Shown here: positions 41,808 to 64,000 of the stretch, piece by piece
Numbering within the stretch: position 1 is the first letter of the stretch
Layout of the letters: the number at the start of each line of letters is the position of its first letter
Assembly: GCF_001194135.2 (NCBI RefSeq)
Contig: NC_068986.1
Location: 71,638,826-71,702,825, forward strand
Direction of reading: 5' to 3'
DNA length: 64,000 bases
DNA from: Octopus bimaculoides
Taxonomy: Eukaryota
Notes under the pieces: generated by a model
What the model saw: the letters and a program-made list of their open reading frames with translations, nothing else
The model's database searches: none
Told to the model about the DNA's origin: nothing
Program-made: the position numbers and the translations under genes

Positions 41808-41889
<82 letters not shown>

Positions 41890-42044
41890 NNNNNNNNNNN
41901 NNNNNNNNNNNNNNNNNNNNNNNNNNNNNNNNNNNNNNNNNNNNNNNNNNNNNNNNNNNNNNNNNNNNNNNNNNNNNNNNNNNNNNNNNNNNNNNNNNNN
42001 NNNNNNNNNNNNNNNNNNNNNNNNNNNNNNNNNNNNNNNNNNNN

Positions 42045-42097
<53 letters not shown>

Positions 42098-42681
42098 CAG
42101 ACCACAAACAATGAAGAGCTCTAAGAAAGTGATGAAAGTAGCCGAAATTTCGAGAAATTTTCAGTAAATCAAAAGTAATTTCGTGTAAGTGCTTGTCCTT
42201 TCAATTAGTTTTGTTTCACGATGGTATATCTCTAAATACTGGAAATCGCATCCACTGTCGCTTGTAATCATCCTGTCTTGTTTTCAACAACTAATGACTA
42301 AATAATCTGATACAGATCAGCCTTCCCTTAACTACACGAACTAAAACAAAAAAAAAAAACAACACCAGCGGTCGAAGAACAATACAAAAAACATGAACGG
42401 CAAAGTTTGGTAGTAAGCACTCCTAGTTGGAATTTTATGGTGGAGTCTTGGAGTAGCTATCTTTTATCACTAGATTATTTTCATTCTTGTTATTTTTCTT
42501 CACGTTTCTAGTATTACCGTGCTTCAACTATATGATGGCGAGCAAAACATCGCGTGAGCAAAATCTCAATGAAATTGAAATCTACAATAATGGGGCAAGT
42601 ATAATAATAGCTTCGTTATATACATATATATACATATATATATATATATGTATATATATGTATATATGTATNNNNNNNNNN

Positions 42682-42714
<33 letters not shown>

Positions 42715-43127
42715 TATATACATATATATGTATACATGTGTATATTTATATATATATATATATATGCATATATATTATATTATACATATATATATGTGTG
42801 TGTGTGTTATAAGCCCGAGTACCTAAACAGTTCTAGGAATTACACCAAAGACCTATACTTGTCAAACACATTCATACGAAACTTGACAGCAGCAAACCGA
42901 TTGTAGTTAGCAAAGAAAATTTTGTTGTTCAGTTCTAAATCTTACCACTCGTTGGTTACCTAACAACACCTATCCTCTTCGATCATCATGGACAATCTTC
43001 CGAAAAGTAGCGCATCTGCCCTTTCTCCTCTGAATAAGTCAGACAAATCTAAAATCTTAACACTCATGCATTCAATATTTCGACAAGAATTGATTTATGA
43101 GATATCCCGATGAGCACACTATGGTCT

Positions 43128-43162
<35 letters not shown>

Positions 43163-43727
43163 NNNNNNNNNNNNNNNNNNNNNNNNNNNNNNNNNNNNNN
43201 NNNNNNNNNNNNNNNNNNNNNNNNNNNNNNNNNNNNNNNNNNNNNNNNNNNNNNNNNNNNNNNNNNNNNNNNNNNNNNNNNNNNNNNNNNNNNNNNNNNN
43301 NNNNNNNNNNNNNNNNNNNNNNNNNNNNNNNNNNNNNNNNNNNNNNNNNNNNNNNNNNNNNNNNNNNNNNNNNNNNNNNNNNNNNNNNNNNNNNNNNNNN
43401 NNNNNNNNNNNNNNNNNNNNNNNNNNNNNNNNNNNNNNNNNNNNNNNNNNNNNNNNNNNNNNNNNNNNNNNNNNNNNNNNNNNNNNNNNNNNNNNNNNNN
43501 NNNNNNNNNNNNNNNNNNNNNNNNNNNNNNNNNNNNNNNNNNNNNNNNNNNNNNNNNNNNNNNNNNNNNNNNNNNNNNNNNNNNNNNNNNNNNNNNNNNN
43601 NNNNNNNNNNNNNNNNNNNNNNNNNNNNNNNNNNNNNNNNNNNNNNNNNNNNNNNNNNNNNNNNNNNNNNNNNNNNNNNNNNNNNNNNNNNNNNNNNNNN
43701 NNNNNNNNNNNNNNNNNNNNNNNNNNN

Positions 43728-43770
<43 letters not shown>

Positions 43771-45169
43771 ATGTATATATGCAGCGTATATTTCTTACTG
43801 TAGAAAAATATAACATATGAAGCCGTAAATAAAAATATTAAAGAAAAGATGAAAAAGATGCAAATTCAGTTACGATGACATATTATACGTAGCGAATCAC
43901 CACAATGAACAAATGATTGCTGTTTAACCGAGAAGGCATGCTTTCTCGTCTCACGAAGAGTAACGCTATTTCCGTAATATTTCCAATATTTATACATTGT
44001 GTGTGTGTATGTATGCACATATATGTGTATGTTTACATGAATATATATGTAGATAGACTGACCGACATACACACAGATAGATACATACATAGATAGATAG
44101 ATAGAATTANNNNNNNNNNAAAGAGGAAAATGGAAAATCTTTTAGAATTATTTATTCGCCATTAAGCGTGTTTCATTTTCTAATAGAAGTTACAACATTG
44201 TACATGTAACAGAAAACATGTAAGATATCTCCTATCAAAAATTCTTCAGAGTATTATTTGCTACTCTGTCTGTAAGAATTTCTAATAGGCGATATCTTAC
44301 ATGTTTTCTATTTCATGTACAATTTTGTAACTCTTGTTAGCATTTGAAATATGGAAGGACGACTAAATAATAATAATATATATCCAATCTCCTGTTTTGA
44401 TATACCAGTACGTTCAACTCTTATGCATACTTCACACAAAAACAGTATCTCCAAATTGATTTGGAATACTGAAAAAGCTGATGTGCTTCAAGAGGACACA
44501 CCTTCGATTTACCCTATTTACATATCTACATAATACATACATACACATACACAAATATGCGTGTGTGCGCGCGCACATGCCTGTGCGTGTTTGTACGTTA
44601 TATATAACGCAAGTACGTGCGTTTTGTGTGTGTAACATATACATTAATACATATACAAACAATGAATCGTGAAACTATTGTTACTCTTTACACTTCATGT
44701 TAATTAAACTTTCATTCATTGAATGTCTTTCATATGGGATGAGATTCTCATTCTGCACAATTTTAGTTATTGCTGCTTATACTATCATTGTACTGCCCCG
44801 CTTAAGTCCTGATACAACTTGTGAAGGAAAATATATTACTTCATTGCAAAAATATTTAAAATATATTAAGAGAGAAGCATCACTTACCTCTCTATATTTT
44901 CTCTATATTTCAACAACCGACAAATAAAACTTCACCACGACATTTACAAATAACATCTGTCATAGAAACAGCACACTCAACACACACATGCTCACACACA
45001 CACATATCTATAAATGTATATGTATTGTTGTGTGTGAGTGCTTTTCAAAAGGAAAGGTTTCTCTATAACGTAATATATTACTTAAATTCTGAATAGTTGC
45101 TTTGTATACCTATGCCCACAATTGAAATACTTTGACATACATGAATAATTTAGACTACATGAAGAAAAA

Positions 45170-45720
45170 GCCAACCGACTCTACTTTTGCTACTACAATT
45201 TTTATTCGAGAACTCTTACATGCTAATTTATTTAGCAGGAACTTCATTTTGAGATATGGTGACATTTCTCTTCAAATCTCAAGAATCTTCGTTAGGATTC
45301 TTACTGAATACAGGATGGTATTTTCTGCAGATCACTTATGCTTCTCTCAATTCCAATAGCAGCCTCTGCGGCGTCTTAGATAGCAATTTGAGTGTCGTAT
45401 GATGTGTGCCAATTACCATAGGAACAATCGTCACCTTTGTTTTTCAAAAGCGCTTCATCTTTCTTGCCAGGTTCTTATGTTTTTCAGTTTTCTGAAGTTC
45501 TTTCATATACATTCCAGCACCATATTGTATTTGAAACTCTTTGTTCTGATAATGTTTATTTTTTTCTCTTTTATGGATATATTTTATCTATTTGCTTCAG
45601 TAGTATGGTTAGTCTTTATGGAAAAATCTTCTAGAATCCTGTAATTGTAATTCATCTTCACAACTTCTGGTTCTTGGTCACATTTTCCTGTCACTTTGAG
45701 TCCACAAACTTCGCAATGTA
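45170..45720 (-). mobile_element. Dong/R4-clade non-LTR 3' fragment C (restriction-like endonuclease end), decayed
   Basis: Minus strand KHKNLARKMKRF*KTKVTIVPMVIGT...ILYSVRILTKILEI* matches the C-terminal KY.DLA.E..RLW..KV.V.PIVIG.LG...ALL.SARILR.VLE pattern. Confidence 0.7.
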
Positions 45721-46018
45721 CACTTTATGAATAAAATCATTCAATTAGCAAAGCTTTTGCAAAATAATTGTGGTAACGAAAGCAGTCACGGAAGAAAGAG
45801 AGTATTAGTCTGCTTACAGTATACTAATGTTAGTGAATGAAAGTTTGCGATTTACTCGGGTTGTTTTTCTTCACGAAGTCAAAAATATTGAAGAGCGTAA
45901 CAACTAATCCCTCCTGGTTGTGGGAATGCAAGGCTCGCTTAAAAGGTAAGTAATCTTTTCGTCTCCTTTTCCACAGATTCTGTGTATGCTCTCTGACTAA
46001 TTAGCAATTCAGCCACAT

Positions 46019-46100
<82 letters not shown>

Positions 46101-46128
46101 TAATAATAATAATAATAATAATAATAAT
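46019..46128. repeat. (TAA)n microsatellite, 5' flank of Dong element
   Basis: Direct reading. Confidence 0.95.
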
Positions 46129-46834
46129 AGAGCAAGCACTAAGAACAAACTACGTAAAATACAGAGTAGACAACACATCAGAAAGTGATAAGTGCAGAAT
46201 TTGTGGACAAAATGGTGAAACCGTATGGCATATTACCAATCAATGTACGCCACTAGCCCAGAAGAAATATAAGAAATGCCACGACAATATAGCCAGGTTT
46301 GTCCATTGGACACTTCGCAACAACTATGGACTTGACAGAGAAAAAATTGGTACGACCACAAACCCGAAGGCATCATTGAAAATGATAATGCAAGGATCCT
46401 GTGGGATGTTATGATTCAGTGCGACCATGCGAAAGAGAATAGGAAGCCAGACATAGCCTTGAGAAAGAAACCAAACTATGTTGGATCATAGATACAGCAT
46501 GCTCAGCTGACAACAAGATATGCGATAAGAAAGAAATAAAAGTCGACAGGTATTACGGGTTAGCTTGGAAGGTAAAGCAGTTGTGGTCGATGAAAAAGGT
46601 GGTAGTTGTACCAATAATTGTTGGAACCTTGGAAACAGTGAGTAAAAATCTCGAGAAGTACATGGAACAAATAGGAGCTGCAATAAGGGTGGAGCACTTG
46701 CAGAAAACAGCACTGCTTGGAACCGCTCGAATACTCTGGAAGGTGCTCGAAAAATAAGAGGTGTTACCTTAGTTCATTGGTAATGAACAGCTGGCACCGT
46801 AGTACATCTCCAGCGTTAGACGCTGTGCAAAGGC
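46129..46834 (+). mobile_element. Dong/R4-clade non-LTR retrotransposon, 5'-truncated copy D (CCHC finger, REL endonuclease, 3' UTR)
   Basis: EQALRTN..CRICGQNGETVWHITNQC..HDNIARFVHW; after a frameshift WYDHKPEGIIEN..ILWD..IQCDH..RKPDI; after a second frameshift WIIDTA..VVVVPIIVGTL..LQKTALLGTARILWKVLEK* (TAA 46755-46757). A 77-nt 3' UTR follows, then (AAT)n. Confidence 0.92.
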
Positions 46835-46919
<85 letters not shown>

Positions 46920-46932
46920 TATTATTATTATT
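46835..46932. repeat. (AAT)n microsatellite, 3' flank/tail of Dong element
   Basis: Direct reading. Confidence 0.95.
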
Positions 46933-47744
46933 CAGGGGGCCACGACCGAGTTGGATTTTTCTGCCCTGTACCCACTACATTGACAGAGCTTGAATTTCAT
47001 TTTTCTGTATATGTGTCTGTGTGTTTGTGCCCCCACTCTCTCTCTACGAACATCATCAATATAGCTTGTCTTCATCCTCTATTAAGAGCGTGAAAGTTTC
47101 CAAACGAAAGTACCTGCTATTCAGAAGTTCAACTAAACAGATTCTTTGAATCAATCATCTCTTGTCATCTATACATCTTAACATTTTGTACTCTAAAAGC
47201 TGCTTATAAACGTCATTGCACCGTTTTGCAACATTTCAATAGAGGAATCTACGCACATCAATTCAAGCCAAGTATCACTCACACCAACACCACCATTCTC
47301 TCAATACCTTCGAAAATCATTATAGCCTATACAAGATTATAATGAAGATTAAACGTTAATAATTAAAATGAAGGTACATGTAACAGGACTTCATGTTATT
47401 GAGGAAATTTTCAATAAACAGCAACTTTATCTTTCAAATTCAATAATGATGCCATAAAAACTAAGCAATGACGTTCAGTTAACTACATGTGAAATTCACT
47501 GACTGACATCAGCAAAAGGCTGACGGATCAGAGTTAATTCTGATTCAACTAGAACTAAAGGAAGTAGATCTGGGCAGTCGAACAGACAGGAGAAAGGAAT
47601 CGAATGTCGTAGAACAGCTGATCTGCTGTACTCAGGCAATCAGCTGTTTGATTGTCACACATATCAATATTTGAGTCAGCAGCACAAAAAGACAAAGGCT
47701 GCTTTTATCTAAAGGGCTAAATTATGGCAGATAACATTTGTATA

Positions 47745-47802
<58 letters not shown>

Positions 47803-48317
47803 CCCAACTCNNNNNNNNNNNNNNNNNNNNNNNNNNNNNNNNNNNNNNNNNNNNNNNNNNNNNNNNNNNNNNNNNNNNNNNNNNNNNNNNNNNNNNNNNN
47901 NNNNNNNNNNNNNNNNNNNNNNNNNNNNNNNNNNNNNNNNNNNNNNNNNNNNNNNNNNNNNNNNNNNNNNNNNNNNNNNNNNNNNNNNNNNNNNNNNNNN
48001 NNNNNNNNNNNNNNNNNNNNNNNNNNNNNNNNNNNNNNNNNNNNNNNNNNNNNNNNNNNNNNNNNNNNNNNNNNNNNNNNNNNNNNNNNNNNNNNNNNNN
48101 NNNNNNNNNNNNNNNNNNNNNNNNNNNNNNNNNNNNNNNNNNNNNNNNNNNNNNNNNNNNNNNNNNNNNNNNNNNNNNNNNNNNNNNNNNNNNNNNNNNN
48201 NNNNNNNNNNNNNNNNNNNNNNNNNNNNNNNNNNNNNNNNNNNNNNNNNNNNNNNNNNNNNNNNNNNNNNNNNNNNNNNNNNNNNNNNNNNNNNNNNNNN
48301 NNNCACACACACACACG

Positions 48318-48366
<49 letters not shown>

Positions 48367-49814
48367 CATTACGAGTGGTTTCAAGAACAAAACACGACTA
48401 ACCAATACTTAATGTATGGTATTGCACTACTATTTGTGCATGACTTTAATTTTAATACAAAGTTCCAAGATGAAGATAATCATCAGATTACTAATGCGTA
48501 TATATTATTGAAATAGATTATTATGAAATACCATTCACCAAATATTCAATTTAACATAGCAAAAAGTACAAAAAAGTGCAAGAAAGTGAAAAAATTACAA
48601 AAAGTGCGAGCAACTTTAAGGGTAAATATTTCACAAAGATATAGTCCACTGTTGTTTAACATAAATATTATTAGAGAAAGTTTCACTTTCACTCCCAGCA
48701 ATTAGAATATTTTATCTAAATAATCTAATTATAAAAACATAAATACTCATATGGGATTTATGCCCTCGAAATAACAACTGTCAAAGTGTTTCAGCGAGTT
48801 ACCAATAATTTTGATTTCAAATTCCAATAATAAAGAAGATAATATAACTGAATACTAAATTACTATAAAAGGAAACTTTTATGGACCACTACGTTAATTC
48901 TTCCTAAATGTAGATGAGAAAATTACTACAGAGGTTCCATATGATATACGGAAGTTGTGAGACAGTCGTACTTTTAAAATAAATTATTAAATCATAAGCT
49001 ATAATAAGCATAAAATGTTTTAACCAATGTACGACTGAAAGATTTCTCGTGTTAATTAATGTCATAATATTAACCAACGCCTTAAATAAATGTTTTGAAA
49101 CTTTTACGAAAAATGTAAACATTTGAACAAATTTCATTTTAGACATATTTAGTAGCTCTAACTTAATCGTTTGAGGAAGATTTAGACGGAAGTTTCATAC
49201 GTGCTCTTCAGTGTTCAACAAAATCAATTCCTCCTCCAACATGATATTAGTCTACGGGCATTTTCCTTTCCCCACTCTTCTCATTAAATTATAAAGTGTA
49301 CGTATACATTTAAATATATCAATTGAATTTAATTAAATCCATACAAGACTGTATACATAAATGCGTAAGTGTATCCGTGCTTGTTTTATGGAAGCAACAG
49401 TTAGATCGATGGTGACCGAAGACATTTATTCATATAAAATTTAATAGCGTTCAGTATCGATGTTGAAACTTCCAGCTGGGTTTAACGATAACATTTTGAG
49501 AAGAAAAATATGGTTCGAGTAAACGTTCTTAGAAATGCAATTGGAACATATGGCAGTGTTTCTACTTCTCTATGCAAATAAGAAATATTAATGAAGGAAA
49601 ATGAATTATATATACTCATAATATATATATATTTCATTATATATATATATATATATATATACATANNNNNNNNNNNNNNNNNNNNNNNNNNNNNNNNNNN
49701 NNNNNNNNNNNNNNNNNNNNNNNNNNNNNNNNNNNNNNNNNNNNNNNNNNNNNNNNNNNNNNNNNNNNNNNNNNNNNNNNNNNNNNNNNNNNNNNNNNNN
49801 NNNNATATATATAC

Positions 49815-49940
49815 GGAGAGAGAGAGAGAGCGAGAGAGAGAGAGAGCGAGAGAGAGAGAGAGCGAGAGAGAGAGCGAGAGAGAGAGAGCGAGAGAGAGAG
49901 AGAGCGAGAGAGAGAGAGAGAGCGAGAGAGAGAGAGAGAG
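49815..49940. repeat. (GA)n with periodic GC interruptions
   Basis: Direct reading. Confidence 0.9.
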
Positions 49941-52633
49941 TGATATATATTTTCCTTTACTAAATTTTCTTCAATTGCTTGTAAGCAAAAGAGATATTTA
50001 CACCACATCACCGTCCCCAGTGCATTTACAAGAACGTTACTTCAACCATATATTTTTCGTTCGAAGTTTATCTCAATATGCTTTCACTCAGCCTAGCTGG
50101 ATATTTATGGCACGTCGCCAGCTATACTGAACTCTAGTAATAATATTTATTTAAATAAATTTCTTCGGTCATTGTCCATGCCTTCATAAAACAAGCATAG
50201 GCATATATTCACACACAGATATATACATAATGTATTATAACGATATAGTTTGTTTAAATCATAGTGCAGTAGGGTTAAACGTGATTTAGGATGCGACTGC
50301 TGTGCAGGTTGGAATTGCAAGAACGAAAAGCAGCAAAACAGAAACAAAAAAGTTTACACTTCTATTTTCTATTACAATATTTCGGCTAAAAATCTTTTAT
50401 CAGGAAATATGAAGAATGGATCTATTTTTTACTTAGTTTCGCATCTCACAACACATCTGCTCCGCATAAGACAAGGTAATTCTCTTCAGCACATTCGACC
50501 AATCAACATACTATTTCCGCACCAATAATAAACACGTTTCACCTGTAATACATATCCTCTAATGATGCTTCATATTCAACCACATCGTATATTCTCCCCT
50601 GCTTCACTACGTTTTGCCAGTAGGTTAATGGACAGACCTAAGTTTTGCTAGTAGGTTAATGGACAACCTAAGACATGACTAAATTATGTATACATCGTTG
50701 TAGACTATGAGGAGATTTAAATATGTTCCTATTTGATTGGGCTACTATTAGCGTTAAAAGATAACAACATTAATAACTACACTGCAATTTTTCATTCAGT
50801 AACGATGAATTAAACCACTTCATCTCGTTCACCAATATTTTCGCTTTGCATTTGCATTTGTTTCCATTATATCTGACATACGTGTTAGTTTCCTACATAC
50901 CATTACCGACAGTTCCTTGTATTACAAGTCCACTCATATGTCAATTATTGTTATTTTCTTGCCACAAGCGTTTCTGTTTCAAACGTGCCTTCCCTACCCA
51001 CATCAAGCCTGCACAGTATTCTACCAAACAGATGCACACCTTAAAACTGAATTCCTTTTTTCGTTACCTTCCTCTCGATCACGCGTCGTTTAAAAACTCA
51101 CTCTCCGAAGCATTTGCTTTCTTCTCTGAACCCGTGATCGCCCGCTTTTCTCTTTGGGAAATAATATAGATAAACGCAATCTCTCGACCAGAAGTCTCTT
51201 CGTTTCTCTCTATATAATCAGATACTTTCAAATACTGTCGTTGAAGTTACAACACTTGTAACTTCAAATCTGATACCACAGCACTAACTTCATGAAATTT
51301 CATCACAATGTCACTCAACCTGATCTCTGACAATCTCATCTGCTGCATTGGATAAAAAAAGGTATTAAATACGTGCGAAACTTGATGCCATCTAATAAAT
51401 AATTTTCGTCTTATTCCCCTTAATATCTGCAGTAATACTAAGGATATTTGCAAACCCGTGGTCGTCAATTTACTTTGTTACGACGTGTTTTTCTGTATTT
51501 GTTAGGGCTTGCTACACATTACAGATCAAATCACATCTGCTGTTATAAGGAGAAGTCACTTTATATTTGGCATGGCATCTCCAGCAAGCATAGGAAATGG
51601 CTTTTGCTATCCGTACTCATTTGTTTAAAATGTCATCAATCCTTTCTATTTTACATATTCCCGAGCGTACTTGCTGATATGAGAACACGTGAACCTATTC
51701 TCATACCTTGCATAGCGTCATCCTTATTCTTCCTTACATGCTTGTCTACCTAATGTTTGTGTAACCGTAATTTTATATGTATCTATTTATGTATCTTAAT
51801 ATTTTGCTTAGGCTTTGTGATACTAGGTGTAGAACTCAGTACACCTATGCTTCAGAACGATATGTTGGTCGAGGGCAGAACGGTAATAAGAAAATGAGAA
51901 AGAATTAAACGATTATCTTATGAACATATCCAAGGGTCCGATGAAACTATAAGCTGTTACTTTGGCATTCAACTACAAGTTCACTGCATCTTATAGTAAT
52001 AACAGTTGTAAGCTAATGACGTTCGTAAGATATTCATTTAATTCCTTTATTTATGTATGTACATGTGTGTGTATTTATGTGATTGTGGTCATACACATAC
52101 AGCATATCTTAATATGTTGCAATCTCTATATAACTGATTACTGTTCCATTTCTCACAGTTCTTCACATCGTAAATCTGGCTGTTAGCTTTCTACTAAAAT
52201 ACGTTTCATTTGGCTATTTCTTCCCTTACTTTTCCTACTCTCTTATCTCTTTTCTCCCTTGCTTATTCAAGACATTTATTTGGTCAGTGAAATCCTAATC
52301 ATTCTCTGCAAAAAGAATTTGCTAGAAAAGGCAGTACTCCCGTGTCCCATTAGCATTCAAAATCGTCTAGCATAATTAAATGCCAATTGTTTTTTTTTAA
52401 ATGTACTACATTCAGTCGATAAACATAAACAAGCAATTACAAATATATTGTAACAACAGCTGAACAAAAAATAACCATGTTTTGGAGGAAATGCATAAAA
52501 GGTTTCAACAACAGAAATACAAATGATGATAAATGTATTAACCTCACATTCATTTGAAGAGAAAGTTTGCAGCATACATATATAATAAAAAGTGAAGTAA
52601 TATGTATATGTTTGTGTGTATGTTTGTTTGCTT

Positions 52634-52674
<41 letters not shown>

Positions 52675-52723
52675 CGCGTATGTGCGCGTTTGGTGTCTGG
52701 TGTGTAAATATACATGCTCTATT

Positions 52724-52791
<68 letters not shown>

Positions 52792-55330
52792 CATACATAT
52801 TTATACACATTATATACATATATATACACACGCACACATATGTATAGATAAGTATATATATATGAATATATATGAATATACATATGTGCATACACGCAAA
52901 CACACATATACACGCATATGTATAGAAAGAAAGAGAGAGAGAAAGAGAAATTGGAGGCAAAGTTACATTTTAGTAATACTATTTATTGTTATACAAAATT
53001 GACTTATCAGGTGCATGTGAACATGTTTCAGATTATTTCTTATTGTCTTATTTAGTTAAAAACACTAAAGGAAATAAACTCACCTGCGAAATAGCATTAC
53101 TTCCATATTCTTTTCACAAAATGACGTTGGCGTTTCTATCCATGTCATTCACACTTCCACCAAAATACAATAGCCTAGACCTCTTATGTGTATAATTGTC
53201 CGACTCAATGACATTTTTTTTTAATTTGCTTGGTACAAGACTTACCAGTCACACCTCTCATATCATATCGTCAATGGAAATTTAACAAATGATTCAATAA
53301 TCAGTTAGAGTGTAAAATTATTGCTAAAGGTGGAATAAAGATGAATTTATATTTATGTCTGTGCAATAAATTAAGCAGCTAAAACTATTTTGATTGATGT
53401 GTTTGAATAACAATGAATTTAGATTTTCAGTTATTTTCTTAGCATGGAAATATTTTCATCAAATGCAGAGGTATATATTATGTGGAAATATCGAATTAAA
53501 GTTTCTAATTCTGATTTATACTTATACTGACACAAATTTTTAATCGTTATCGTTTACGGTTCTAATGAATATTCAATATAATACTTCATATACTAAATAA
53601 ATATGTTTTATGGCAGGATTCATTATATAAAATTAAAGTATTTGTGTTGTTATGATGTACAAATATGTACTTAATTGCATAAATGCATCATATATCTACT
53701 AAATATTTATTTCATTTATATATATATATATATATNNNNNNNNNNNNNNNNNNNNNNNNNNNNNNNNNNNNNNNNNNNNNNNNNNNNNNNNNNNNNNNNN
53801 NNNNNNNNNNNNNNNNNNNNNNNNNNNNNNNNNNNNNNNNNNNNNNNNNNNNNNNNNNNNNNNNNNNNNNNNNNNNNNNNNNNNNNNNNNNNNNNNNNNN
53901 NNNNNNNNNNNNNNNNNNNNNNNNNNNNNNNNNNNNNNNNNNNNNNNNNNNNNNNNNNNNNNNNNNNNNNNNNNNNNNNNNNNNNNNNNNNNNNNNNNNN
54001 NNNNNNNNNNNNNNNNNNNNNNNNNNNNNNNNNNNNNNNNNNNNNNNNNNNNNNNNNNNNNNNNNNNNNNNNNNNNNNNNNNNNNNNNNNNNNNNNNNNN
54101 NNNNNNNNNNNNNNNNNNNNNNNNNNNNNNNNNNNNNNNNNNNNNNNNNNNNNNNNNNNNNNNNNNNNNNNNNNNNNNNNNNNNNNNNNNNNNNNNNNNN
54201 NNNNNNNNNNNNNNNNNNNNNNNNNNNNNNNNNNNNNNNNNNNNNNNNNNNNNNNNNNNNNNNNNNNNNNNNNNNNNNNNNNNNNNNNNNNNNNNNNNNN
54301 NNNNNNNNNNNNNNNNNNNNNNNNNNNNNNNNNNNNNNNNNNNNNNNNNNNNNNNNNNNNNNNNNNNNNNNNNNNNNNNNNNNNNNNNNNNNNNNNNNNN
54401 NNNNNNNNNNNNNNNNNNNNNNNNNNNNNNNNNNNNNNNNNNNNNNNNNNNNNNNNNNNNNNNNNNNNNNNNNNNNNNNNNNNNNNNNNNNNNNNNNNNN
54501 NNNNNNNNNNNNNNNNNNNNNNNNNNNNNNNNNNNNNNNNNNNNNNNNNNNNNNNNNNNNNNNNNNNNNNNNNNNNNNNNNNNNNNNNNNNNNNNNNNNN
54601 NNNNNNNNNNNNNNNNNNNNNNNATATATATATATATATATACATATAAAATACATACATACAGACATACATGCACAGGAATGAAAAAGCATGAAAGAGG
54701 AAGATAGTACTTAATACATAGTGTAAATACCTTTTCATATATTTATTTAAACTGATGTTTTGGTCATTATTCCCCACCCTGAAATCTTTTAGGCAACTAA
54801 AATAGATACTCAAACTATTGTATTCGTTTGCATTCTTACGTTTTTTCATTAGTTAATCCATTTTGATCATTGATTGATAGTAATCATAGATAATGGTACA
54901 ATCCTAACATACTCATACTGCCACATCATTTTTCCATAATAACCCTATCTGCAAATGAGACCAAACTTTCAAACATAAATTTATTTTGTTTTATACGGGA
55001 TACGACGTTGTATTTTGTGTAGTGCGACTATGTATGTAGTATGTTACCATTTATATCTATGTATTTATAAATATTCCTTAGCTTTCAAATATGTCGTGAC
55101 AAGATGTTCAATTCGCTCTATACACATTCTGAAAAGAGTGCATATGTTGCGTGTAATTGATTTTAAATGTTCAGGTCACCGCTGAGATATATATGTACTT
55201 CTGTGCATTTTAATCATCGTACATTGTGTATAGCTTTGATTTGTTTTTGCTTGTGAGTGACTAGCTATTTAGTTATATTCTGGTGTGTGTGATTTACATT
55301 CTCTGTGTAGTTGTAGCTAACTTTATTCCT

Positions 55331-55560
55331 ATTTCTTTACTGCCCACAAGGGGCTACACACAGAGGGGACAAACAAGGATAGACAAACGAATTAAGTCGA
55401 TTATATCGATCCCAGTGCGTAACTGGTACTTATTTAATCGACCCCGAAAGGATGAAAGGCAAAGTCGACTTCTGCGGAATTTGAACTCAGAACGTAGCAG
55501 CAGACGAAATACCGCTAAGCATTTCGCCCGGCATGCTAACGTTTCTGCCAGCTCGCCGCC
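55331..55560 (-). mobile_element. Young full-length tRNA-derived SINE with target-site duplication
   Basis: Minus strand GGCGGCGAGCTGGCAGAAACGTTAG (A box-like)...GAGTTCAAATTCC (B box). Flanked by direct repeat (c)tttattcct at 55321-55330 and 55560-55569. Confidence 0.92.
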
Positions 55561-57355
55561 TTTATTCCTGTTAAAGAGCGTATAGTATCTATGTTCAGTA
55601 GGAAACAGTTCGATGATTAATACAAGGAAAGTCTTAGCTAACAAAAATAATCATAAAAGACAAAAAAAAAAGACCTATATGTAAATAGATATAGAAAATA
55701 TCTATCTTTAAAGGAAGACAAACATTTTCCGTGGTAAAAGCACAAGGATCTACACAATATTTCTTATAAACTAATATACACCGAGTCTGCACCATTCAAT
55801 ACTGATTCTCCTAAAACGAGCCAATTAGAGTTCAGTCCTCACATTCAGCAAATGGACCAAAAATTCATCAGAGCCAGACAAATGAAGATTATCTTGTCTA
55901 ATTCACTCTTGAACCTAAATATAGTGTAACTCACTACATAAAAGCTGGGTCATGACCAAATTCCTTAGTTTATATATATATATATATTTGTGAGTGGTTG
56001 TGCATGTATGGGTCTATATATGTGTGCGTGTATGTGTGTATAGAGAAATACAACATGTGTCAACATTCATCTTTTAAATGTGTATGAAATAATAGTTTCG
56101 AATTTTCTATCACCTGTTTCATTACGTCTGAAGTTTATTTCTTAATATAACGTAGGAGCTAACATGACATTCAGCAAGGAAAAAAAGGATTAAAGGGAGG
56201 CGAGATTGAAAATCTTTTAAATAAAAATGAACATATATCTATCTATACCAGCTGGCAAAATCTGAATTCCAAAAGATATAGAGAAGTAGAGTATCAGTGT
56301 TTTGCTTATACATGTACGAAAAAGGCTTTCTTTCTAAATAATTCTTATTAGTAAGTATTAATACAGAGTAATATAAGAATGTATAATCATCTACCTCTAT
56401 TGGATTGTTATCCTATTTTTATATTGACTTGTTAGGACTTGAATTAATTCAAACGTCTTTTGGGTCAAATGATATAAAAAAAATTTGAAAATTCAAACTT
56501 GATTAACAATAAAAAAAAATCACAAAATTAGCAAATTTCATTTGTCTTTGATGTCACATGGTTGTAATTAGAGAGGAGCAAAGATAAAAAATTTTTATTC
56601 GTAAACATAAATTTTACGATTTTAGAAATCGTGCCTTAATTCAGTTCATAATATAAGAAGATGATTTTAAAGAATTGGCCGTATAAACTAGTCTGTTGCA
56701 TTAAAGAATTACAATAATATGTTAAAAATAAATTGCTTCGTTTTTAGTGTAGTTGAAGTTTTACTTGTTACTCAGCTACGGCATATTTGCAAATACCAGT
56801 ATGCCATTCTCATNNNNNNNNNNNNNNNNNNNNNNNNNNNNNNNNNNNNNNNNNNNNNNNNNNNNNNNNNNNNNNNNNNNNNNNNNNNNNNNNNNNNNNN
56901 NNNNNNNNNNNNNNNNNNNNNNNNNNNNNNNNNNNNNNNNNNNNNNNNNNNNNNNNNNNNNNNNNNNNNNNNNNNNNNNNNNNNNNNNNNNNNNNNNNNN
57001 NNNNNNNNNNNNNNNNNNNNNNNNNNNNNNNNNNNNNNNNNNNNNNNNNNNNNNNNNNNNNNNNNNNNNNNNNNNNNNNNNNNNNNNNNNNNNNNNNNNN
57101 NNNNNNNNNNNNNNNNNNNNNNNNNNNNNNNNATCAATTTATTAATAAATTAATAATTAATAATTTTTACCAAGCCCATCGGTATGTAAGCACCATTATC
57201 GGTGTGGAACTTATTTAAAAGTTCTTATACATTTATAAACAAAATTAAGGGATCAGCAAACAGGTTGCTTCACCACATACCGAAGTTCAGAAATAGCAGC
57301 TAAAAATGCTGAAACTGCTATCTGTTGGAGTTTCACCATTTTTAGCTGTTATTTC

Positions 57356-57397
<42 letters not shown>

Positions 57398-59049
57398 TAT
57401 AAGTTTCTATGTATCTATGGGAATTCACTCATATTAAAGTCTTAATATAAATTAAACCTACTAAGTAATTTTTAATAACTAACTTAAATGTTATATTCAT
57501 CGATGTCATTAATTTCATAAGAATTTTTATGAAAACAAAATACGAAAGCATAATGTGTCTCATATTCCATGTAGACGTAATAGTAGTAAAGTAGCTGAAT
57601 ATGGTCTCCTAGAAGTTATTGGCTACAGTGTCTGTAGTGGTGTATGATATCGGTAGTATAGATAGTGGTGGTAGTGGTATTAACAATGATATGATGGTGG
57701 CGGTGATGTTGGTGGTACAAACTGTGAGAATAGTTTATTAGGTGAAATTATTGGCAATGCACGTGATTTTGGTTGGTGATGATCATGTTGGTGTCGAAAG
57801 TATAAAAACACATCAAATGTTTGGATTTCAATCTAAAACATTGCAGTAATGGCTTTCATATTGTTTATAATATACTGGGAACTATATTTGATTTATTTTT
57901 ATATATTAGTTATTAGTTATCAGAGATTTTTTACTAAATCTGTTACATATTATCGAATTAGATCTTTGATTTTATATTTCTCAATGATATATAGAAAATA
58001 AAAGATTGAAAGCTTTTTATGTAATTTCATCGAGGTATCAAAGATTACTAACTATTTCAACATTTCATTCTGAAATAGTTTGCCATGTTTTGAATAAATA
58101 TGCCAAAATATTATATGTAAGTTTAAATTTAAGGTTTGGCGAAGTAATTTTATATGTGACATTCTATAAAACTAATTTAGGTACTATATTTAGATTAGAA
58201 ATACTATTCCGAAATACATATTTCAAACGTTATTTGTTTGACAATTTTCTATTTTCTGGATTATACAAATTTGAATGATAGCAGAAATAGGGAAGTAAAA
58301 ATCCCCATAGGCGAGTTTTTAATAATTTCCAAGAAAAATGTACATGTAACCTGCTAAAGTACAAACGTCACTTATATTCGTACCATAAAACAATGTATGG
58401 TGTTATTATCATTAAAGAATTATCATTTATATCCTTCATATGATTTTCTTGCGAACTAAAATCGTCCAGTAATATATTTTCGCGAATCGAATGAATGAAA
58501 GATAAAAGTGAGAGACGTTGTCATATTCAATTCTAAAATGTGTAACTTAATATCCGATGAATGAAAATTAGTGAAATTATTAGCAATCTATAACGAAATT
58601 AGATTTGGGTGGATTTATTTATAATGGGTATTATAATTTACATAATCGTGTTTTGGCTGATAATATAGATAATCAGCTAACCTAAAATATGTGTACTAAA
58701 GTACAGATTCTGTAATTCTGCATGTATTCTTGTAACGTGATCACTGTCAGATTAATCTGTTTCATCTGGTGTTGTAGTGTCTTTACGCTTTTGAGGTCAG
58801 TAACTATACTTAGATAACTTATCAAAGCCTATCAGTTTGTGAAATCTCAAAAAAAGTTTTAAATTATATGCTGTATGTAACTGTAAAAGAAAATGATGAA
58901 TATGTATCTATATATTTTAAGACATCAGATGCAACTCGTTGAAAATCTGTATTTGTTTTAAAATGTTAATCTAACATTCATATGATTGTTATATTTATTG
59001 CTTAATGAGTTTAAATTTTTCTTGCTATTTCAGATTCTGTCCCATACAT

Positions 59050-59850
59050 ATATGGCTTGCATCATTCTAGAATTTTCCAGAGGAGATCGAATCAAATCTG
59101 CATTCTTTCGATTTGCAAGTTAGATAATATAGTGATAGTCCTCTTCATTTTGTTTCTGAAAAAAGTAGTATAATTGAAAGAGTCATGGTTACATTTACCC
59201 GCCGGCATTTCGTTTGCTTCGCTCTCGTTATCTAGGCTAATTTATGGATATGATAGATGCCTTGGCTCTATATGTCTAATTTTGAAGGTATAACGTTTTG
59301 TTTGTGAATAAGCAAATCACATCTACTGATTTGAGTTTCTTAGGTTATTTGCTTTGTTGTACAGCTATAATTTAGTTTACAACTGGGTCTCTTAAATAAC
59401 TTTCTGTGAAGGGGTTGACAGGCAAATATTTGTTGTAAATAGCGCCTAAAAAAGGTGTAGTTATTTCTGATTTTTCCTCATATGTATTTCAGTTTATTAA
59501 TGTCAGTAACTTAGGAGTATATTTGATATCATCCTAATGTCTACTGTCTTGTAGTATGGAGCACCTATTTCTCACTTTGTTTTTGAAAACTACGAGCAGT
59601 TGGCTAGATTAGCCGTTTTATTATAGATGTCTTGGAAAATTCTAGTAGAGCACATGGTTGTAATATTTCCGAGGTCGAAGTATAAAATTCAACAACGTCA
59701 GTTCATGTGAATTGGCGCTCTCTTTATTGCTAATATATATATTTTTAACCAGATAATTATGGTCATTACTAATATTGTATAATACATGGAGGTTAGTAGC
59801 TTTACTAATTATATCATGATAGTTATTTAACATTTTTGTAATCAATTAAT
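59050..59850 (-). mobile_element. Penelope-like retroelement relic (RT C-terminus, linker, start of GIY-YIG region)
   Basis: Minus strand VLYNISNDHNYLVKNIYISNKESANS (like LYVN..SNHPP.I.KNIP.SI..R.S..SS), FLGAIYNKYLP and HRKLFKRPSCKLNYSC (like KLHKIFNRNT.KLSYSC), and AGKCNH (like GKCL). Many disablements. Confidence 0.55.
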
Positions 59851-60947
59851 CCCAGCTCACGCTTACAGAAATTTATTAATCTGCATTGAGGATTAGTGGC
59901 GATTAATGTCTAGTTACGTTTATGCACAACGACTTCTACCTTTAATATCTATACTCTTCTAAGTATGTTTGGTAGAGTAATCGTATTTGAATTATCCTAA
60001 TTCGTTTTTAGTGAAGTAATTTCTTCTATGTATATTTACAATACACATAACTGTAAAATATTTGGATATGTGTACACAATAAAGTTACCATCTGCTTTTC
60101 GGGTGTTTAGTGTAATAAATTTTAAAAATCTTAAAGCAGAAAGCTGTTTTAAGTAATGATGTAATCTGACCAAAATATTACATAGCAAAATCTGTAACTT
60201 GCCAGATTTCAATGAAATATAAACCAGTAGATTTTCACATTCTTTCTTCACTAAACTGTGTGCGGGTTAAAAATGTACAATGAAGATTTATTACCACAAT
60301 AACATGTATGAATAAATGTAGGTTTTGCGGTAAATCTCAAGTATAATAGAAATAATGTTCAAGTTTAAAAGACAAATGATTTGCTCACATAAACACATAA
60401 GCTTTATTCAGAATCGGTACCAGTGTACCTCCAAATATATAAATCTACTAAAATCTCTGTGTGACTTCATACGATTAAGTTCTATTTTTCTATTTTGCAG
60501 ACAATAAAGTTTGGAAAGTAAGTTAATATGAAGACGTTTCTTGCCTTTCTTTCGTTGTCTCCATAAGATAATATTGGTGATATCAGTTTTAATGAAATAC
60601 CGTAATGCACATAGTGAACTATCTTGTATATAATCATCAGCAACCACCAGCTGTTTTAAGGGCAATTATCTTTAAACATTAATTATTTCTACTTTATAAG
60701 CGTGAGTCTTGTTGTTTAGTAACAACTCAGCCCTAACTGAGCTGTTCAGAAACATTGCAGTTTCTAATTTCCCGTATTCTTTTATTTAAGTGATAGTGTG
60801 ACTTGAGGGCATTTGGAAATGATATAGGCATCTACGTATGTTTCTGTATTTTCTTTTGCTACAAATTCTATTAAGATTTCAATCCAATTTCATACAATTG
60901 ACTTTTATTTTTCTGCTTGTGGATCTATTATTCTCTCTTCCTCCCTC

Positions 60948-60948
60948 A

Positions 60949-61034
<86 letters not shown>
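60948..61034. repeat. (CT)n microsatellite
   Basis: Direct reading. Confidence 0.95.
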
Positions 61035-61036
<2 letters not shown>

Positions 61037-61183
61037 AATCATATAATTTACACATACAGGCTAACACAAACGCACACATATATATAGGAGTATATACATA
61101 CATATACATATGTATATATATACATACATACGTACGTATATATATATATATGTGTGTATATTTATACATGCATGTATATAACG

Positions 61184-61253
<70 letters not shown>

Positions 61254-63810
61254 GAAATAGATAAATATATATATAAATAGATTACAATAAAAATAAAGTC
61301 CAGGGAGATGGTGGTGGTCTGCGTCAGCAAATATCGAATTTATTGATATAAATACAAAGTTTTTTTAAAGTTCATATACCATTAAGAAAAGCGGATGAAT
61401 TTTGGACAAAGTCTCTCTTCGTGGAGTGTGAAAGTTTTTCTCCTTTCTTAAACTACGAGAGCATGGACAAACTGGTGAATAGCAGGAAATGACAATGAAT
61501 TATATGTGCATGAAAGTAGACACAACATTTGTTTTGATATTTCTTTTATCTGAATTCATAACAGCCCCACTCTTTCCCGCAACAGTAATCCATTCTGTGG
61601 TACCCAGACTTGAACAGTTAGGCAATTTTAAATGCATTCAATACACATTTTACACCTGTCTTTATATCAATAATAAAATAGTAATCACCTGACCCAAATC
61701 ATTATTCCAAATCACCCAAACTTTTGGTTGCATATCTGCCAATATTACACATTGCATTACATACAAATTCTGCTGTGCTTTATAAGTTGGTTAATGAAGA
61801 AAGCATTGTCTAAATGATTGCTTTGGTAGTGAACGCGTTGTCCCACACACAATAGGCCACCTCATTTCAACAAACTTGGTTAGTCCATTTACTTCTCCTC
61901 GACGTCCGAACTTTAGGACCCTCTGGGAAACACATAGGACAACGCATCATTTTTACCTTCGGGATATCTCCTTCAGTTATTTTAATTTTTACTTTATTTT
62001 AATGCTCACAATGATGATCATTTTCGAATACAACTTAGTGTGAATATGCATTTCTAATCATCAGCCTGAGCCAGGACGAATGCAGACAGTACTATCGACA
62101 TCATGGTGATTACTATGATCACCGATCTTGCCAAAAGAAAGTCCTCTACTTCAGACTTATCAATTACCATCTGCTTCCTTACCCTTCGATCCTTCAATTT
62201 TACCCAAATATGTTATCTCTCACCTTCTAGACTTACCCTCCTTTAAGTTATCTTCTTCCCCTCGCCAACCACTTTTCAGTCCCACCGTTCCTCGACACAC
62301 AGCGCAACATTTAATTCTTACTCGTTCCCTGTCATTCTCCAATGTGCTTTCGCTCTCATTGATTAAGAATGAGGAAAACATTTCTTGCTCCCCGAAGTTT
62401 TAAATGTTTATAAAACTTAAAAGATACGTTACCAATACATTACCAATATGCTAAGATCAAGTGAATGTTATTATTACTGTATATGAAATTAACGTAGTAT
62501 GTTTAATATGTGTGATACATCATTAGATGAATAATCAGTAATTAAAATCCTTATTTGCTATCAGTTGCTCTCAAGCAACGACTCGTGTATAATACCTAAG
62601 CATTAAAATAAATGGAAAATATCGGGCTTTATAATCCCGCCATAAAACAGGAATTTTTAAAACCTAGCAACTTACATAAAATTCTACATAAATAGAATCT
62701 ATTCTCTACAAAAATTACCATTCCATTGATTGTAAAATTCAAGATTTTAAGACTCTTTAAATTAATGCTTACGTAAACAGAATAATGGATAACAGAATCA
62801 GTTGTACATCGGAGAAAATGTTTTACCGTGTTTAACTATATTTGTTTATGCTTTGAATCAATCTTGGATTTTCATCAACACTTAGAGAGCGATAGAAAAT
62901 GCACACGTGGAGTACAAGAATAAATTTAATCGGCTGTTACTCCGTCCTCCAAAATTAGGAGTTGTGCTAAATTTAGAAGTCTATAACTGTTTCTGTAGAT
63001 TGTGCATAGTATGTGTATGAAACTCCCGTAAAGATTGAAAACACAAATTATGTTCTCTATGATAATTGATATAAATTGAAGTGTGCTACATATCGAGTCA
63101 TATATCAGCTCATCGTACTTGCACGCTTATACAGAAATATTAAGAAGTCCCATTTCTCTTCTATCCTGCTAGAAACCAGTCTACATTGCTTATTTAATGT
63201 TCTCTGCATTGATAATTATTACGTTTCCTATATTTAAAATCTGTAGTATATTTAGATAACTATTTCTATACTTCCACCGAAATTGTATTGTATACTCAAC
63301 GTACATGTTTTAAAAATCAATAAATATCTTATGAAGTATTAGAATATTGATTACTGTTTAAATGCTTTTTAAACCCTAACAAGTGCGATGTTGCGTGCGT
63401 GTGTGCGTGCGTTTGTGTGTCTGTGGATGGTGAACTTGTTTAGTAAATGTCTGTATTGTGAACTTTTTAGTAAATATTCTTTCTTTCAGAAATTATTTTA
63501 TTTTAAATTAAGCCCCAAACATTGACCCAGGTTAAGTGAAAATGCTTTTAACATCAATCTTATATAACCTATTGTGCTCTCGTGCAAGGGTGATGAAGAT
63601 ATGAATAAATTACCTTAGCATTGCACAAAGAGGGTATTACACTCTTGGGTGAGAAGTTTGACCTGTAGTAGTGCTTTCTTGTGAGTTTAACGAAAGAATG
63701 CATTACTATGGTCAAACATTTCATGGATATGGGATCGTGAAAACGATGACGTCATTGGTGAAACGAACACCGTTTTTCTAATCAGTGGTAGAGAATGGAG
63801 AAAAACTCAC

Positions 63811-63894
63811 CTATCAATGGAACTGTTGCGGCATGAGGGACTGACTCGGCCAGCAATAGCAACAAGAGGAAAAAGGCGACGAAAATGTTCATTC
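63811..63894 (-). CDS. nAChR-like subunit, M2 / M2-M3 loop exon, downstream copy A (84 nt)
   Basis: Acceptor atttatgttacag|GA (phase 1) and donor ATAG|gtgagt (phase 1). Encodes (G)MNIFVAFFLLLLLLAESVPHAATVPLI(G); the final G plus GT of the M3 exon gives Gly, in frame. Confidence 0.9.
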
Positions 63895-63934
63895 CTGTAA
63901 CATAAATAAGTGGTGGAAAATGAGATTGACTCAC

Positions 63935-64000
63935 CTATTAAAGGAATGGACGAGGCCGCCCGAGGAGTGGATTCTGCCAGCAATAGCAACAAGACGAAAA
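63935..64000 (-). CDS. nAChR-like subunit, M2 / M2-M3 loop exon, upstream copy B (partial; acceptor outside window)
   Basis: Encodes ..FVLLLLLAESTPRAASSIPLI(G) with donor ATAG|gtgagt in the same phase as copy A; clearly paralogous to copy A. Confidence 0.88.

What the first reader, a model, noticed from the sequence alone, without database searches (positions are those of the whole stretch)
63895..63934. 40-nt spacer between the M2 exons implies steric exclusion
Seen: the intron gtgagtcaatctcattttccaccacttatttatgttacag is exactly 40 nt, and any branch point lies at most about 30 nt from the donor. Exon A is 84 nt (3n), so double inclusion would stay in frame, escape NMD and duplicate M2. Known: donor-to-branch distances below about 50 nt block joint spliceosome assembly, as in alpha-tropomyosin exons 2/3. 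Inference: exclusivity is hard-wired by spacing, striking in a gene whose next intron is about 800 times longer.
Basis: partly seen in the sequence, partly recalled or inferred. Interest (0 to 1): 0.72.

Follow-up and report, generated by a model that had tools for sequence, protein, structure and literature searches.

The report
Octopus receptor pore exons, 40-nt apart
Two duplicated exons for the pore helix of an octopus acetylcholine-receptor gene sit only 40 bases apart and are used one at a time; the gap is probably too short to be spliced out, a mechanism already known from worms and mammals.

Summary
On the minus strand, a 40-nt GT-AG intron (63934..63895) separates two homologous exons. 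Exon A (63894..63811) is 84 nt. The next intron is 32,582 nt.

The gene is an Octopus bimaculoides nicotinic-receptor-type subunit. Its closest named relative is Lymnaea subunit type I, and it has PAK rather than GEK before M2.

RefSeq isoforms of O. bimaculoides and O. sinensis carry exon B only, exon A only, or neither exon. None carries both. Assembled transcripts from a more distant octopod carry exon A only, with an identical peptide. A and B differ mostly at synonymous sites (dN/dS about 0.17), so both are functional and the pair is mutually exclusive.

Steric exclusion by the 40-nt spacer is the best explanation, because any branch point lies 37 nt or less from the donor and both exons are 3n. 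The same pattern occurs in five C. elegans clusters. It remains unproven: I could obtain neither junction reads, nor the octopus minimum intron length, nor the spacer in other cephalopods. Homologous tandem M2 exons elsewhere have spacers of 120 to 509 nt.

The spacer looks like a by-product of a 127-nt duplication. This is a new member of a known kind, of modest interest.

The parts
63935..64000 (-). Exon B, the upstream M2 exon. It is partial: 66 of an inferred 87 nt, cut by the window end. It encodes ...FFVLLLLLAESTPRAASSIPLI|G.
   Evidence: The full peptide GMNIFVAFFVLLLLLAESTPRAASSIPLIG is in RefSeq isoforms X1, X3, X5 and X6.
63895..63934 (-). The 40-nt GT-AG spacer intron between exon B and exon A. 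Candidate branch points are CTCAT (A14) and CTTAT (A28).
63905..63934 (-). The first 30 nt of the spacer. It is homologous (about 77%) to the first 31 nt of the intron after exon A, and is therefore the duplicated donor-side flank.
   Evidence: (repeat D2).
63811..63894 (-). Exon A, the downstream M2 exon, 84 nt. It encodes (G)MNIFVAFFLLLLLLAESVPHAATVPLI(G), covering M2 positions 5' to 23' plus an M2-M3 linker one residue shorter than in exon B.
   Evidence: It is present in RefSeq X2 (O. bimaculoides and O. sinensis) and in Logan transcripts P0087 and P0197-P0199.
63780..63810 (-). The first 31 nt of the long intron, the counterpart of spacer nt 1-30.
31229..63810 (-). The 32,582-nt intron between exon A and the M3 exon. 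It contains repeats, assembly gaps and retroelement remnants.
31110..31228 (-). The M3 exon, 119 nt, encoding (G)AYFCLSMVMITLSTVFACVVANMFFRGVRVHRAPYWLRA.
   Evidence: It is identical to the RefSeq proteins.
27528..31109 (-). A 3,582-nt intron.
27066..27527 (-). The last coding exon: cytoplasmic loop, M4 and the stop codon (taa at 27068..27066).
   Evidence: It is identical to the C-termini of P0084, P0183 and P0184.

Best explanation
The window holds the 3' part of an Octopus bimaculoides nicotinic-receptor-type (Cys-loop) subunit gene on the minus strand. One exon encodes most of the pore helix M2 (positions 5' to 23') and the M2-M3 linker. It was duplicated in tandem as a 127-nt unit: about 10 nt of acceptor flank, the 87-nt exon, and about 30 nt of donor flank. 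This left two functional copies only 40 nt apart. mRNAs contain copy B, copy A, or occasionally neither, but not both (shown). Double inclusion is most likely prevented physically (inferred). A branch point for exon A inside the spacer lies at most 37 nt, and probably 13 to 27 nt, from exon B's donor. That is below the roughly 50 nt needed for U1 and U2 complexes to assemble on one intron. A branch point upstream of exon B would not be in that intron at all. Because donor B and the branch site, pyrimidine tract and acceptor of A overlap within about 40 nt, definition of exon B and of exon A probably also compete directly, which gives regulators a simple switch. The isoforms differ at pore position 13' (V in B, L in A), at 22' and 24', and by one residue in the gating linker, so they should differ in gating and conductance.
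For: Anatomy: a 40-nt GT-AG intron, an 84-nt exon A and a next intron of 32,582 nt. Identity: the M3 and M4 exons are 100% identical to O. bimaculoides RefSeq proteins, and the Pfam LBD and membrane domains are present. Exclusivity in O. bimaculoides: X1/X3/X5/X6 carry B only, X2 and XP_014776329 carry A only, and X4 carries neither. In O. sinensis: X1/X3 carry B, X2 carries A, and X4 carries neither. Four Logan transcript ORFs from a more distant octopod carry A only, with an identical exon-A peptide. None of the 12 named cluster members carries both exons. Both copies are under purifying selection: dS about 0.95, dN about 0.16, dN/dS about 0.17 over 21 codons, with intact frames and consensus splice sites. 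Both exons are 3n, so NMD cannot enforce exclusivity. Both donors are GTGAGT (U2-type), so U2/U12 incompatibility is excluded. Precedent: five C. elegans clusters have intervening introns too short to excise, and all have 3n exons (PMC4165533). In humans, 57 clusters have a donor-to-branch-point distance under 50 nt (PMC5740500). A steric threshold of about 50 nt is cited in PMC7969005. Origin of the spacer: repeat spacing of 127/124 nt, and homology of spacer nt 1-30 to the intron after exon A.
Against: There is no direct evidence on B-to-A junction reads. The absence of a double-inclusion isoform in gene models is weak evidence. The minimum spliceable intron in Octopus is unknown to me. GT-AG introns as short as 30 nt are annotated in human (PMC4675715), and about 40 nt is the lower limit in C. 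elegans, so 40 nt is borderline rather than impossible. Tandem M2 exons in homologous genes of other lophotrochozoans have spacers of 120, 467 and 509 nt. Aplysia also has A-only, B-only and neither isoforms. Other mechanisms can therefore presumably enforce exclusivity in this family. The spacer length is explained by the duplication breakpoints, so it need not be an adaptation.
Confidence: 0.6

Rival explanations
1. The exons are mutually exclusive, but exclusivity is enforced mainly by something other than spacing, such as regulated repression of one exon, competing RNA structures, or competition for the flanking splice sites. On this view the 40-nt spacer is only a neutral by-product of where the duplication breakpoints fell.
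For: Homologous tandem M2 exons in L001/L002, L015 and L011 have spacers of 120, 467 and 509 nt, all with intact AG/GT sites and 3n lengths. Aplysia californica isoforms X1/X2/X3 show the same pattern of one, the other or neither. Spacer nt 1-30 are simply the duplicated donor flank. Double-skipped isoforms show that exon choice involves more than a steric veto.
Against: Those homologues are paralogues or of unknown taxon, and their exclusivity is not shown. A long intron can still act sterically through a distant branch point, as in alpha-tropomyosin and OGDH. No significant local RNA structure was found: the 261-nt fold has a z-score of -1.9, and the exon-B-end/exon-A-acceptor inverted repeat is at chance level. 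Whatever else acts, a 40-nt intron is at or below the splicing limit of most animals.
Confidence: 0.27
2. The 40-nt intron is spliceable in Octopus. On this view B+A transcripts with a duplicated M2 are made at some level, but are unannotated or are removed at the protein level.
For: Ultra-short GT-AG introns of 30 to 43 nt exist in some animals. The intron has consensus GTGAGT, yUnAy motifs and a pyrimidine tract. Annotation pipelines and aligners may discard very short introns.
Against: None of the 12 named isoforms or orthologues, and none of the 4 transcript ORFs, contains both exons. A double-M2 subunit would invert the topology of M3 and M4.
Confidence: 0.1
3. Exon A is a decaying pseudo-exon left by the duplication and is not used.
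For: Exon A departs more from the family consensus. Its linker is one residue shorter and its Pfam score is lower (114.8 against 122.3 bits). Orthologues in Elysia and homologues in Batillaria and Potamilus have a single M2 exon.
Against: Exon A is present in RefSeq isoforms of two Octopus species and in four assembled transcripts of a third octopod, with a 100% identical peptide. dN/dS is about 0.17, and the frame and splice sites are intact.
Confidence: 0.02

Closest known systems
C. elegans mutually exclusive exon clusters with intervening introns too short to excise: let-2 exons 9/10 (30 nt), egl-15 5B/5A (14 nt), bet-2, gly-5 and gly-6 (PMC4165533)
   Same: In both, tandem homologous exons are separated by a whole intron at or below the minimum spliceable size. 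All exons are 3n, so NMD cannot police double inclusion. No transcripts with the short intron removed are seen.
   Different: The worm introns are clearly below that species' minimum of about 40 nt. The octopus spacer is exactly 40 nt, and the octopus minimum is unknown. The worm cases were verified by RT-PCR, whereas this one rests on gene models and assembled transcripts.
Alpha-tropomyosin exons 2/3 (Smith and Nadal-Ginard 1989), alpha-actinin, and OGDH exons 4a/4b (PMC7969005)
   Same: The branch point of the downstream exon lies less than about 50 nt from the donor of the upstream exon, so the two exons cannot be spliced together.
   Different: In those genes the intron is longer and the effect depends on an unusually distant branch point followed by a long pyrimidine tract. 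Here the entire intron is 40 nt, so no special branch-point placement is needed.
Insect nicotinic receptor alpha6 exon 8a/8b/8c (PMC2064938, PMC5111602)
   Same: Both are Cys-loop receptor subunits in which tandem alternative exons replace the pore-lining TM2 region. Low-level skipping of the alternative exons also occurs in both.
   Different: The origin is independent and in a different subunit clade (GEK cationic type against PAK type). The insect gene has three alternatives rather than two. Its mechanism of exclusivity has not been attributed to spacing.
Lymnaea stagnalis nicotinic acetylcholine receptor subunit type I (Q2XWK4 / ABA60388.1)
   Same: It is the closest named relative, 81% identical to the Elysia orthologue used as query. 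It has the same PAK motif before M2 and the same M2 exon peptide type.
   Different: It is a gastropod protein. No alternative M2 exon is known to me for it. The Elysia orthologous loci have a single M2 exon.

Membership tests
Mutually exclusive exon pair arising by tandem exon duplication | Adjacent exons that are homologous, of the same phase and similar length, and encode the same part of the protein | tested here: met
   The direct repeat has 127/124-nt spacing. The peptides are FFVLLLLLAESTPRAASSIPLIG and FFLLLLLLAESVPHAATVPLIG, with the same phase and lengths of 87 and 84 nt.
Mutually exclusive exon pair arising by tandem exon duplication | Mature transcripts contain one or the other exon, never both | tested here: met
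   Twelve named RefSeq/GenBank isoforms in Octopus bimaculoides, O. sinensis and Argonauta, and four Logan transcript ORFs, carry B only, A only or neither; none carries both. Caveat: these are gene models and assemblies, not read counts.
Steric-hindrance type of mutual exclusion (alpha-tropomyosin 2/3; C. elegans let-2, egl-15) | The donor-to-branch-point distance, or the whole intron, is below the minimum that the species' spliceosome can use | tested here: inconclusive
   The geometry is met: the intron is 40 nt and candidate branch points lie 13 to 27 nt from the donor. The octopus minimum intron length could not be obtained. The literature gives about 50 nt for vertebrates, about 40 nt for C. 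elegans and rare 30-nt human introns.
Steric-hindrance type of mutual exclusion (alpha-tropomyosin 2/3; C. elegans let-2, egl-15) | No junction reads in which the short intron is removed; lengthening the spacer releases double inclusion | not testable with these tools
   No read-level RNA-seq data or experiments are available here. There is only the absence of a B+A isoform.
NMD-enforced mutual exclusion | Exon lengths are not divisible by three, so double inclusion or double skipping shifts the frame | tested here: not met
   Exon A is 84 nt and exon B is 87 nt. The double-skipped isoform X4 is in frame.
U2/U12 splice-site incompatibility | One flanking intron has U12-type signals (a /ATATCCTT-like donor) and the other has U2-type signals | tested here: not met
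   Both visible donors are AG|GTGAGT, and the acceptors are pyrimidine-rich with YAG. The intron upstream of exon B lies outside the window.
Docking-site/selector RNA structure type (Dscam, 14-3-3 xi) | Conserved complementary intronic elements pair one selector with a docking site | tested here: inconclusive
   The local fold z-score is -1.9 and inverted repeats are at chance level. The upstream intron is outside the window and no orthologous DNA was available.
Nicotinic-type Cys-loop receptor subunit | Neur_chan_LBD plus Neur_chan_memb domains, and vicinal cysteines in loop C for alpha-type subunits | tested here: met
   Pfam PF02931 (217 bits) and PF02932 (115 to 122 bits) match both isoforms. 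YACCPEPY is present. The sequence aligns without gaps to human alpha4 M1-M3.
Anion-selective Cys-loop channels | A Pro-Ala-Arg/Lys motif at -2', -1', 0' in place of Gly-Glu-Lys | tested here: met
   ESPAKLQLG aligns with alpha4 ECGEKITLC. The significance of the motif is described in PMC2064938. Ion selectivity itself was not tested.

The most novel reading that the evidence does not exclude
The pair may have been 'born' mutually exclusive. A single 127-nt tandem duplication, with breakpoints about 10 nt upstream and about 30 nt downstream of the exon, would create a spacer too short to splice. A pore-helix exon could then duplicate without ever producing a double-M2 protein, and diverge at once into two gating variants. 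Duplication of this same M2 exon has recurred in PAK-type lophotrochozoan nicotinic subunits: in Octopus, in Aplysia and in three unidentified taxa, with spacers of 40 to 509 nt. That would be a convergent parallel to insect alpha6 exon 8.
Probability: 0.35. Interest if true: 0.5.

Novelty: new member of a known kind. Interest (0 to 1): 0.35.

Why it matters
If confirmed, this would be a clear invertebrate example outside nematodes in which the whole intervening intron, rather than an unusual branch-point position, enforces one-or-the-other use of duplicated exons. It would do so in the pore-lining helix of a neurotransmitter-gated channel of a cephalopod.

It also suggests how exon duplication can be harmless from the start, and it gives two natural channel variants to compare by electrophysiology. 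They differ at 13', 22', 24' and in linker length.

The mechanism itself is textbook, and the isoforms are already in RefSeq. The gain is therefore an example and an evolutionary detail, not a new principle.

Tried and rejected
- **Sensitivity of the first protein search.** (M2-M3-M4 query) missed the full-length Octopus RefSeq proteins. It returned only last-exon ORFs and gastropod and bivalve homologues. The isoforms appeared only when I searched with the Elysia orthologue, so negative results from that tool should be treated with caution.
- **Read-through ORF search.** Searching with the ORF that reads from exon B through the spacer found M2-exon ORFs of many invertebrates but no octopus genomic contig.
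- **Cephalopod and Aplysia genomic DNA.** I could not fetch it to measure the spacer. The Argonauta and Aplysia gene ranges exceed 100 kb, so no DNA was returned. Nucella and Aplysia X1 are not on record. The window ORF across exon A is not on record. Octopus contigs with the M1 exon end 1.6 kb downstream without reaching an M2 exon.
- **Metagenome scan.** A 90-aa spliced query worked.
- **RNA structure.** The fold z-score was -1.9. One 14-nt inverted repeat links the end of exon B with the exon A acceptor, but it is no better than eight other chance pairs in 700 nt. I rejected it as evidence.
- **Rfam and tRNA scans.** Both found nothing.
- **Literature.** I found no paper on alternative M2 exons in molluscan receptors and no paper on the octopus minimum intron length.
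- **Pseudo-exon reading of exon A.** I considered it and rejected it (transcripts, dN/dS).

Full report
**What is there**

The finding lies on the minus strand. Reading 64000 to 63740 gives the end of one exon (...TCCATTCCTTTAATAG), then a 40-nt intron gtgagtcaatctcattttccaccacttatttatgttacag (63934..63895). An 84-nt exon follows (63894..63811, GAATGAAC...CCATTGATAG) and then another gtgagt donor. The exon encodes (G)MNIFVAFFLLLLLLAESVPHAATVPLI(G). The upstream partial exon encodes ...FFVLLLLLAESTPRAASSIPLI(G).

The next coding exon begins at 31228 and encodes GAYFCLSMVMITLSTVFACVVANMFFRGVRVHRAPYWLRA (M3). The intervening intron is therefore 32,582 nt, 815 times the spacer. The last exon (27527..27066) encodes the cytoplasmic loop and M4.

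**What gene it is**

A search with the C-terminal exons found molluscan Cys-loop receptor proteins. It also found a cluster containing the 2015 UniProt model A0A0L8ID00. That model reproduces window-specific intronic ORFs, which identifies the window as Octopus bimaculoides.

A search with the Elysia orthologue found the full-length RefSeq proteins. P0084 and its cluster are 100% identical to the window's M3 and M4 exons. Pfam finds Neur_chan_LBD and Neur_chan_memb, and loop C has the vicinal cysteines. The closest named relative is Lymnaea nicotinic receptor subunit type I.

The TM region aligns without gaps to human alpha4 (5kxi). This alignment places Pro-Ala-Lys at positions -2', -1' and 0', where cationic nicotinic subunits have Gly-Glu-Lys. 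That is the signature of anion-selective Cys-loop channels (PMC2064938). The alternative exon covers M2 positions 5' to 23' and the M2-M3 linker.

**Are the two exons really alternatives?**

Yes. The isoforms carry the exons as follows:

| Source | Exon B only | Exon A only | Neither |
|---|---|---|---|
| O. bimaculoides RefSeq | X1 (545 aa), X3, X5, X6 | X2 (544 aa), XP_014776329 (539 aa) | X4 (516 aa; LQLG joined directly to AYFC) |
| O. sinensis RefSeq | X1, X3 | X2 | X4 |
| Argonauta hians (GenBank) | the one listed isoform (X1) | | |
| Logan transcript ORFs, 500-504 aa, on contigs of 2.1-2.6 kb, from a more distant octopod (about 95% identical elsewhere) | | all four, with a peptide identical to the window's | |

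No member carries both exons.

Exon A and exon B differ mostly at synonymous sites: dS is about 0.95, dN about 0.16 and dN/dS about 0.17 over 21 codons. Both have consensus splice sites. Both copies are therefore functional and old, and the reading of exon A as a pseudo-exon is excluded.

The isoforms differ in four ways:

- Position 13' is V in exon B and L in exon A. This is a pore-lining position.
- Position 22' is T in B and V in A.
- Position 24' is R in B and H in A.
- The M2-M3 linker is one residue shorter in A. This is a gating element.

**How exclusivity is most likely enforced**

Three of the known mechanisms can be assessed from the sequence.

- NMD is excluded, because 84 and 87 nt are both 3n, and even the double skip is in frame.
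- U2/U12 incompatibility is not supported, because both donors are AG|GTGAGT.
- Local RNA structure is unremarkable (z = -1.9; inverted repeats at chance level).

Steric exclusion remains. A branch point for exon A must lie either in the spacer or upstream of exon B. In the spacer, the candidates are CTCAT with A at position 14 and CTTAT with A at position 28, which are 13 to 27 nt from exon B's donor. A branch point upstream of exon B would not be in the B-A intron at all. In either case B cannot be joined to A unless the octopus spliceosome can use a 40-nt intron.

The literature supports the principle:

- A threshold of about 50 nt between donor and branch point is cited from Smith and Nadal-Ginard 1989 and others in PMC7969005.
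- In humans, 57 clusters (9%) are candidates for this mechanism (PMC5740500).
- In C. elegans, five clusters have intervening introns too short to excise, and all have 3n exons (PMC4165533). This is exactly the pattern seen here.

I add one inference. Donor B and the branch site, pyrimidine tract and acceptor of A occupy the same 40 nt or so. U1 binding on B and U2AF/U2 binding on A probably therefore exclude each other at the exon-definition stage.

**What weakens the claim that exclusivity is hard-wired by spacing**

1. I could not obtain read-level junction data, the octopus minimum intron length, or the spacer in any other cephalopod.
2. Forty nt is borderline rather than impossible. About 40 nt is the C. 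elegans minimum, and a 30-nt GT-AG intron is annotated in human (PMC4675715).
3. The same M2 exon is tandemly duplicated in homologous genes elsewhere with longer spacers: 120 nt (L001/L002), 467 nt (L015) and 509 nt (L011). All have AG/GT sites and 3n lengths. Aplysia californica isoforms X1, X2 and X3 show one M2 exon, the other, or neither. These genes are paralogues or of unknown taxon, and the exclusivity of the metagenomic cases is unproven. They still show that a short spacer is not a general requirement in this family. Orthologues in two Elysia species, and homologues in Batillaria and Potamilus, have a single M2 exon.
4. The spacer length has a simple historical explanation. Its first 30 nt are about 77% identical to the first 31 nt after exon A, while its last 10 nt (tatgttacag) are not. 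The repeat period is 127 nt. The duplication therefore copied the exon with about 10 nt of upstream flank and about 30 nt of downstream flank. The spacer was about 40 nt from the start and need not have been selected.

**Comparison with what is known, and novelty**

In mechanism the closest relatives are the C. elegans short-intron clusters and the alpha-tropomyosin and OGDH class. In function the closest parallel is insect alpha6 exon 8, where tandem alternative exons replace TM2 (PMC2064938, PMC5111602).

The isoforms are already in RefSeq. I found no paper describing alternative M2 exons in molluscan receptors.

The finding is therefore a new member of a known kind: a real and tidy example rather than a new principle. 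I put the probability that the pair is mutually exclusive at about 0.9. I put the probability that the 40-nt spacing is the main barrier to double inclusion at about 0.6.

Noticed in passing
window 2-934 (+), continuing to about 1414 across the N-run 936-1401: A long ORF matches the PIF1-like helicase (PF05970, 178 bits) and the Pif1 2B domain. It is probably a Helitron-type transposon fragment downstream of the receptor gene.
   Followed up: partly
window 52360-52800 (-) and 39755-40000 (-): The 2015 UniProt model A0A0L8ID00 (P0013) joins spurious ORF pieces from inside the 32.6-kb intron to the M3 and last exons and omits both M2 exons. It is a mis-annotation that the later RefSeq models supersede.
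   Followed up: partly
RefSeq isoforms X4 of O. bimaculoides (XP_052824822.1) and O. sinensis (XP_036360178.1); Aplysia X3 (XP_005098516.1): In-frame isoforms skip both M2 exons (LQLG joined to AYFC), which predicts a subunit without a pore helix. They could be noise or a regulatory or dominant-negative product. The same pattern appears in three species.
   Followed up: partly
window 63935-64000 compared with 63811-63873 (-): The first 8 aligned codons of exons A and B (FF.LLLLL) have no synonymous differences, while the remaining 13 are near saturation. This suggests partial gene conversion or an RNA-level constraint such as a splicing enhancer. The intron flanks (77% identical) are also more similar than the synonymous sites.
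   Followed up: no
window 63938-63951 and 63887-63900: A 14-nt inverted repeat (12 of 14 pairs) would pair the 3' end of exon B with the acceptor of exon A and loop out donor B. It is no stronger than other chance pairs nearby.
   Followed up: partly
L001 1183-1476; L002; L011 4498-5186; L015 1339-1979: Tandem duplicates of the same 87-nt M2 exon occur in homologous receptor genes on metagenome contigs of unidentified lophotrochozoans, with spacers of 120, 509 and 467 nt. In L001, as in Octopus, the downstream copy has Leu at 13' and Val before PLI, while the upstream copy has Val and Ile.
   Followed up: partly
protein level: ESPAKLQLG before M2, from the M1 exon outside the window (P0084, P0183): The subunit has Pro-Ala-Lys in place of the Gly-Glu-Lys of cationic nicotinic receptors, and Val rather than Leu at 9'. 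It may therefore form an acetylcholine-gated anion channel.
   Followed up: partly
window, 16 N-runs (e.g. 936-1401, 24778-25599, 53736-54623): There are 5,727 N in 16 runs, which are scaffold gaps. Dense microsatellites and low-complexity tracts (TA, CA, TC, AAT/ATT) lie at about 16.3-17.4, 21-22.5, 32.5-33, 46-47, 52.4-53 and 61 kb.
   Followed up: no
window 46001-46754 (+): ORFs give a weak, sub-threshold match to the zinc-binding region of reverse transcriptases (PF13966, 17.8 bits). This is probably a retroelement remnant inside the long intron.
   Followed up: no
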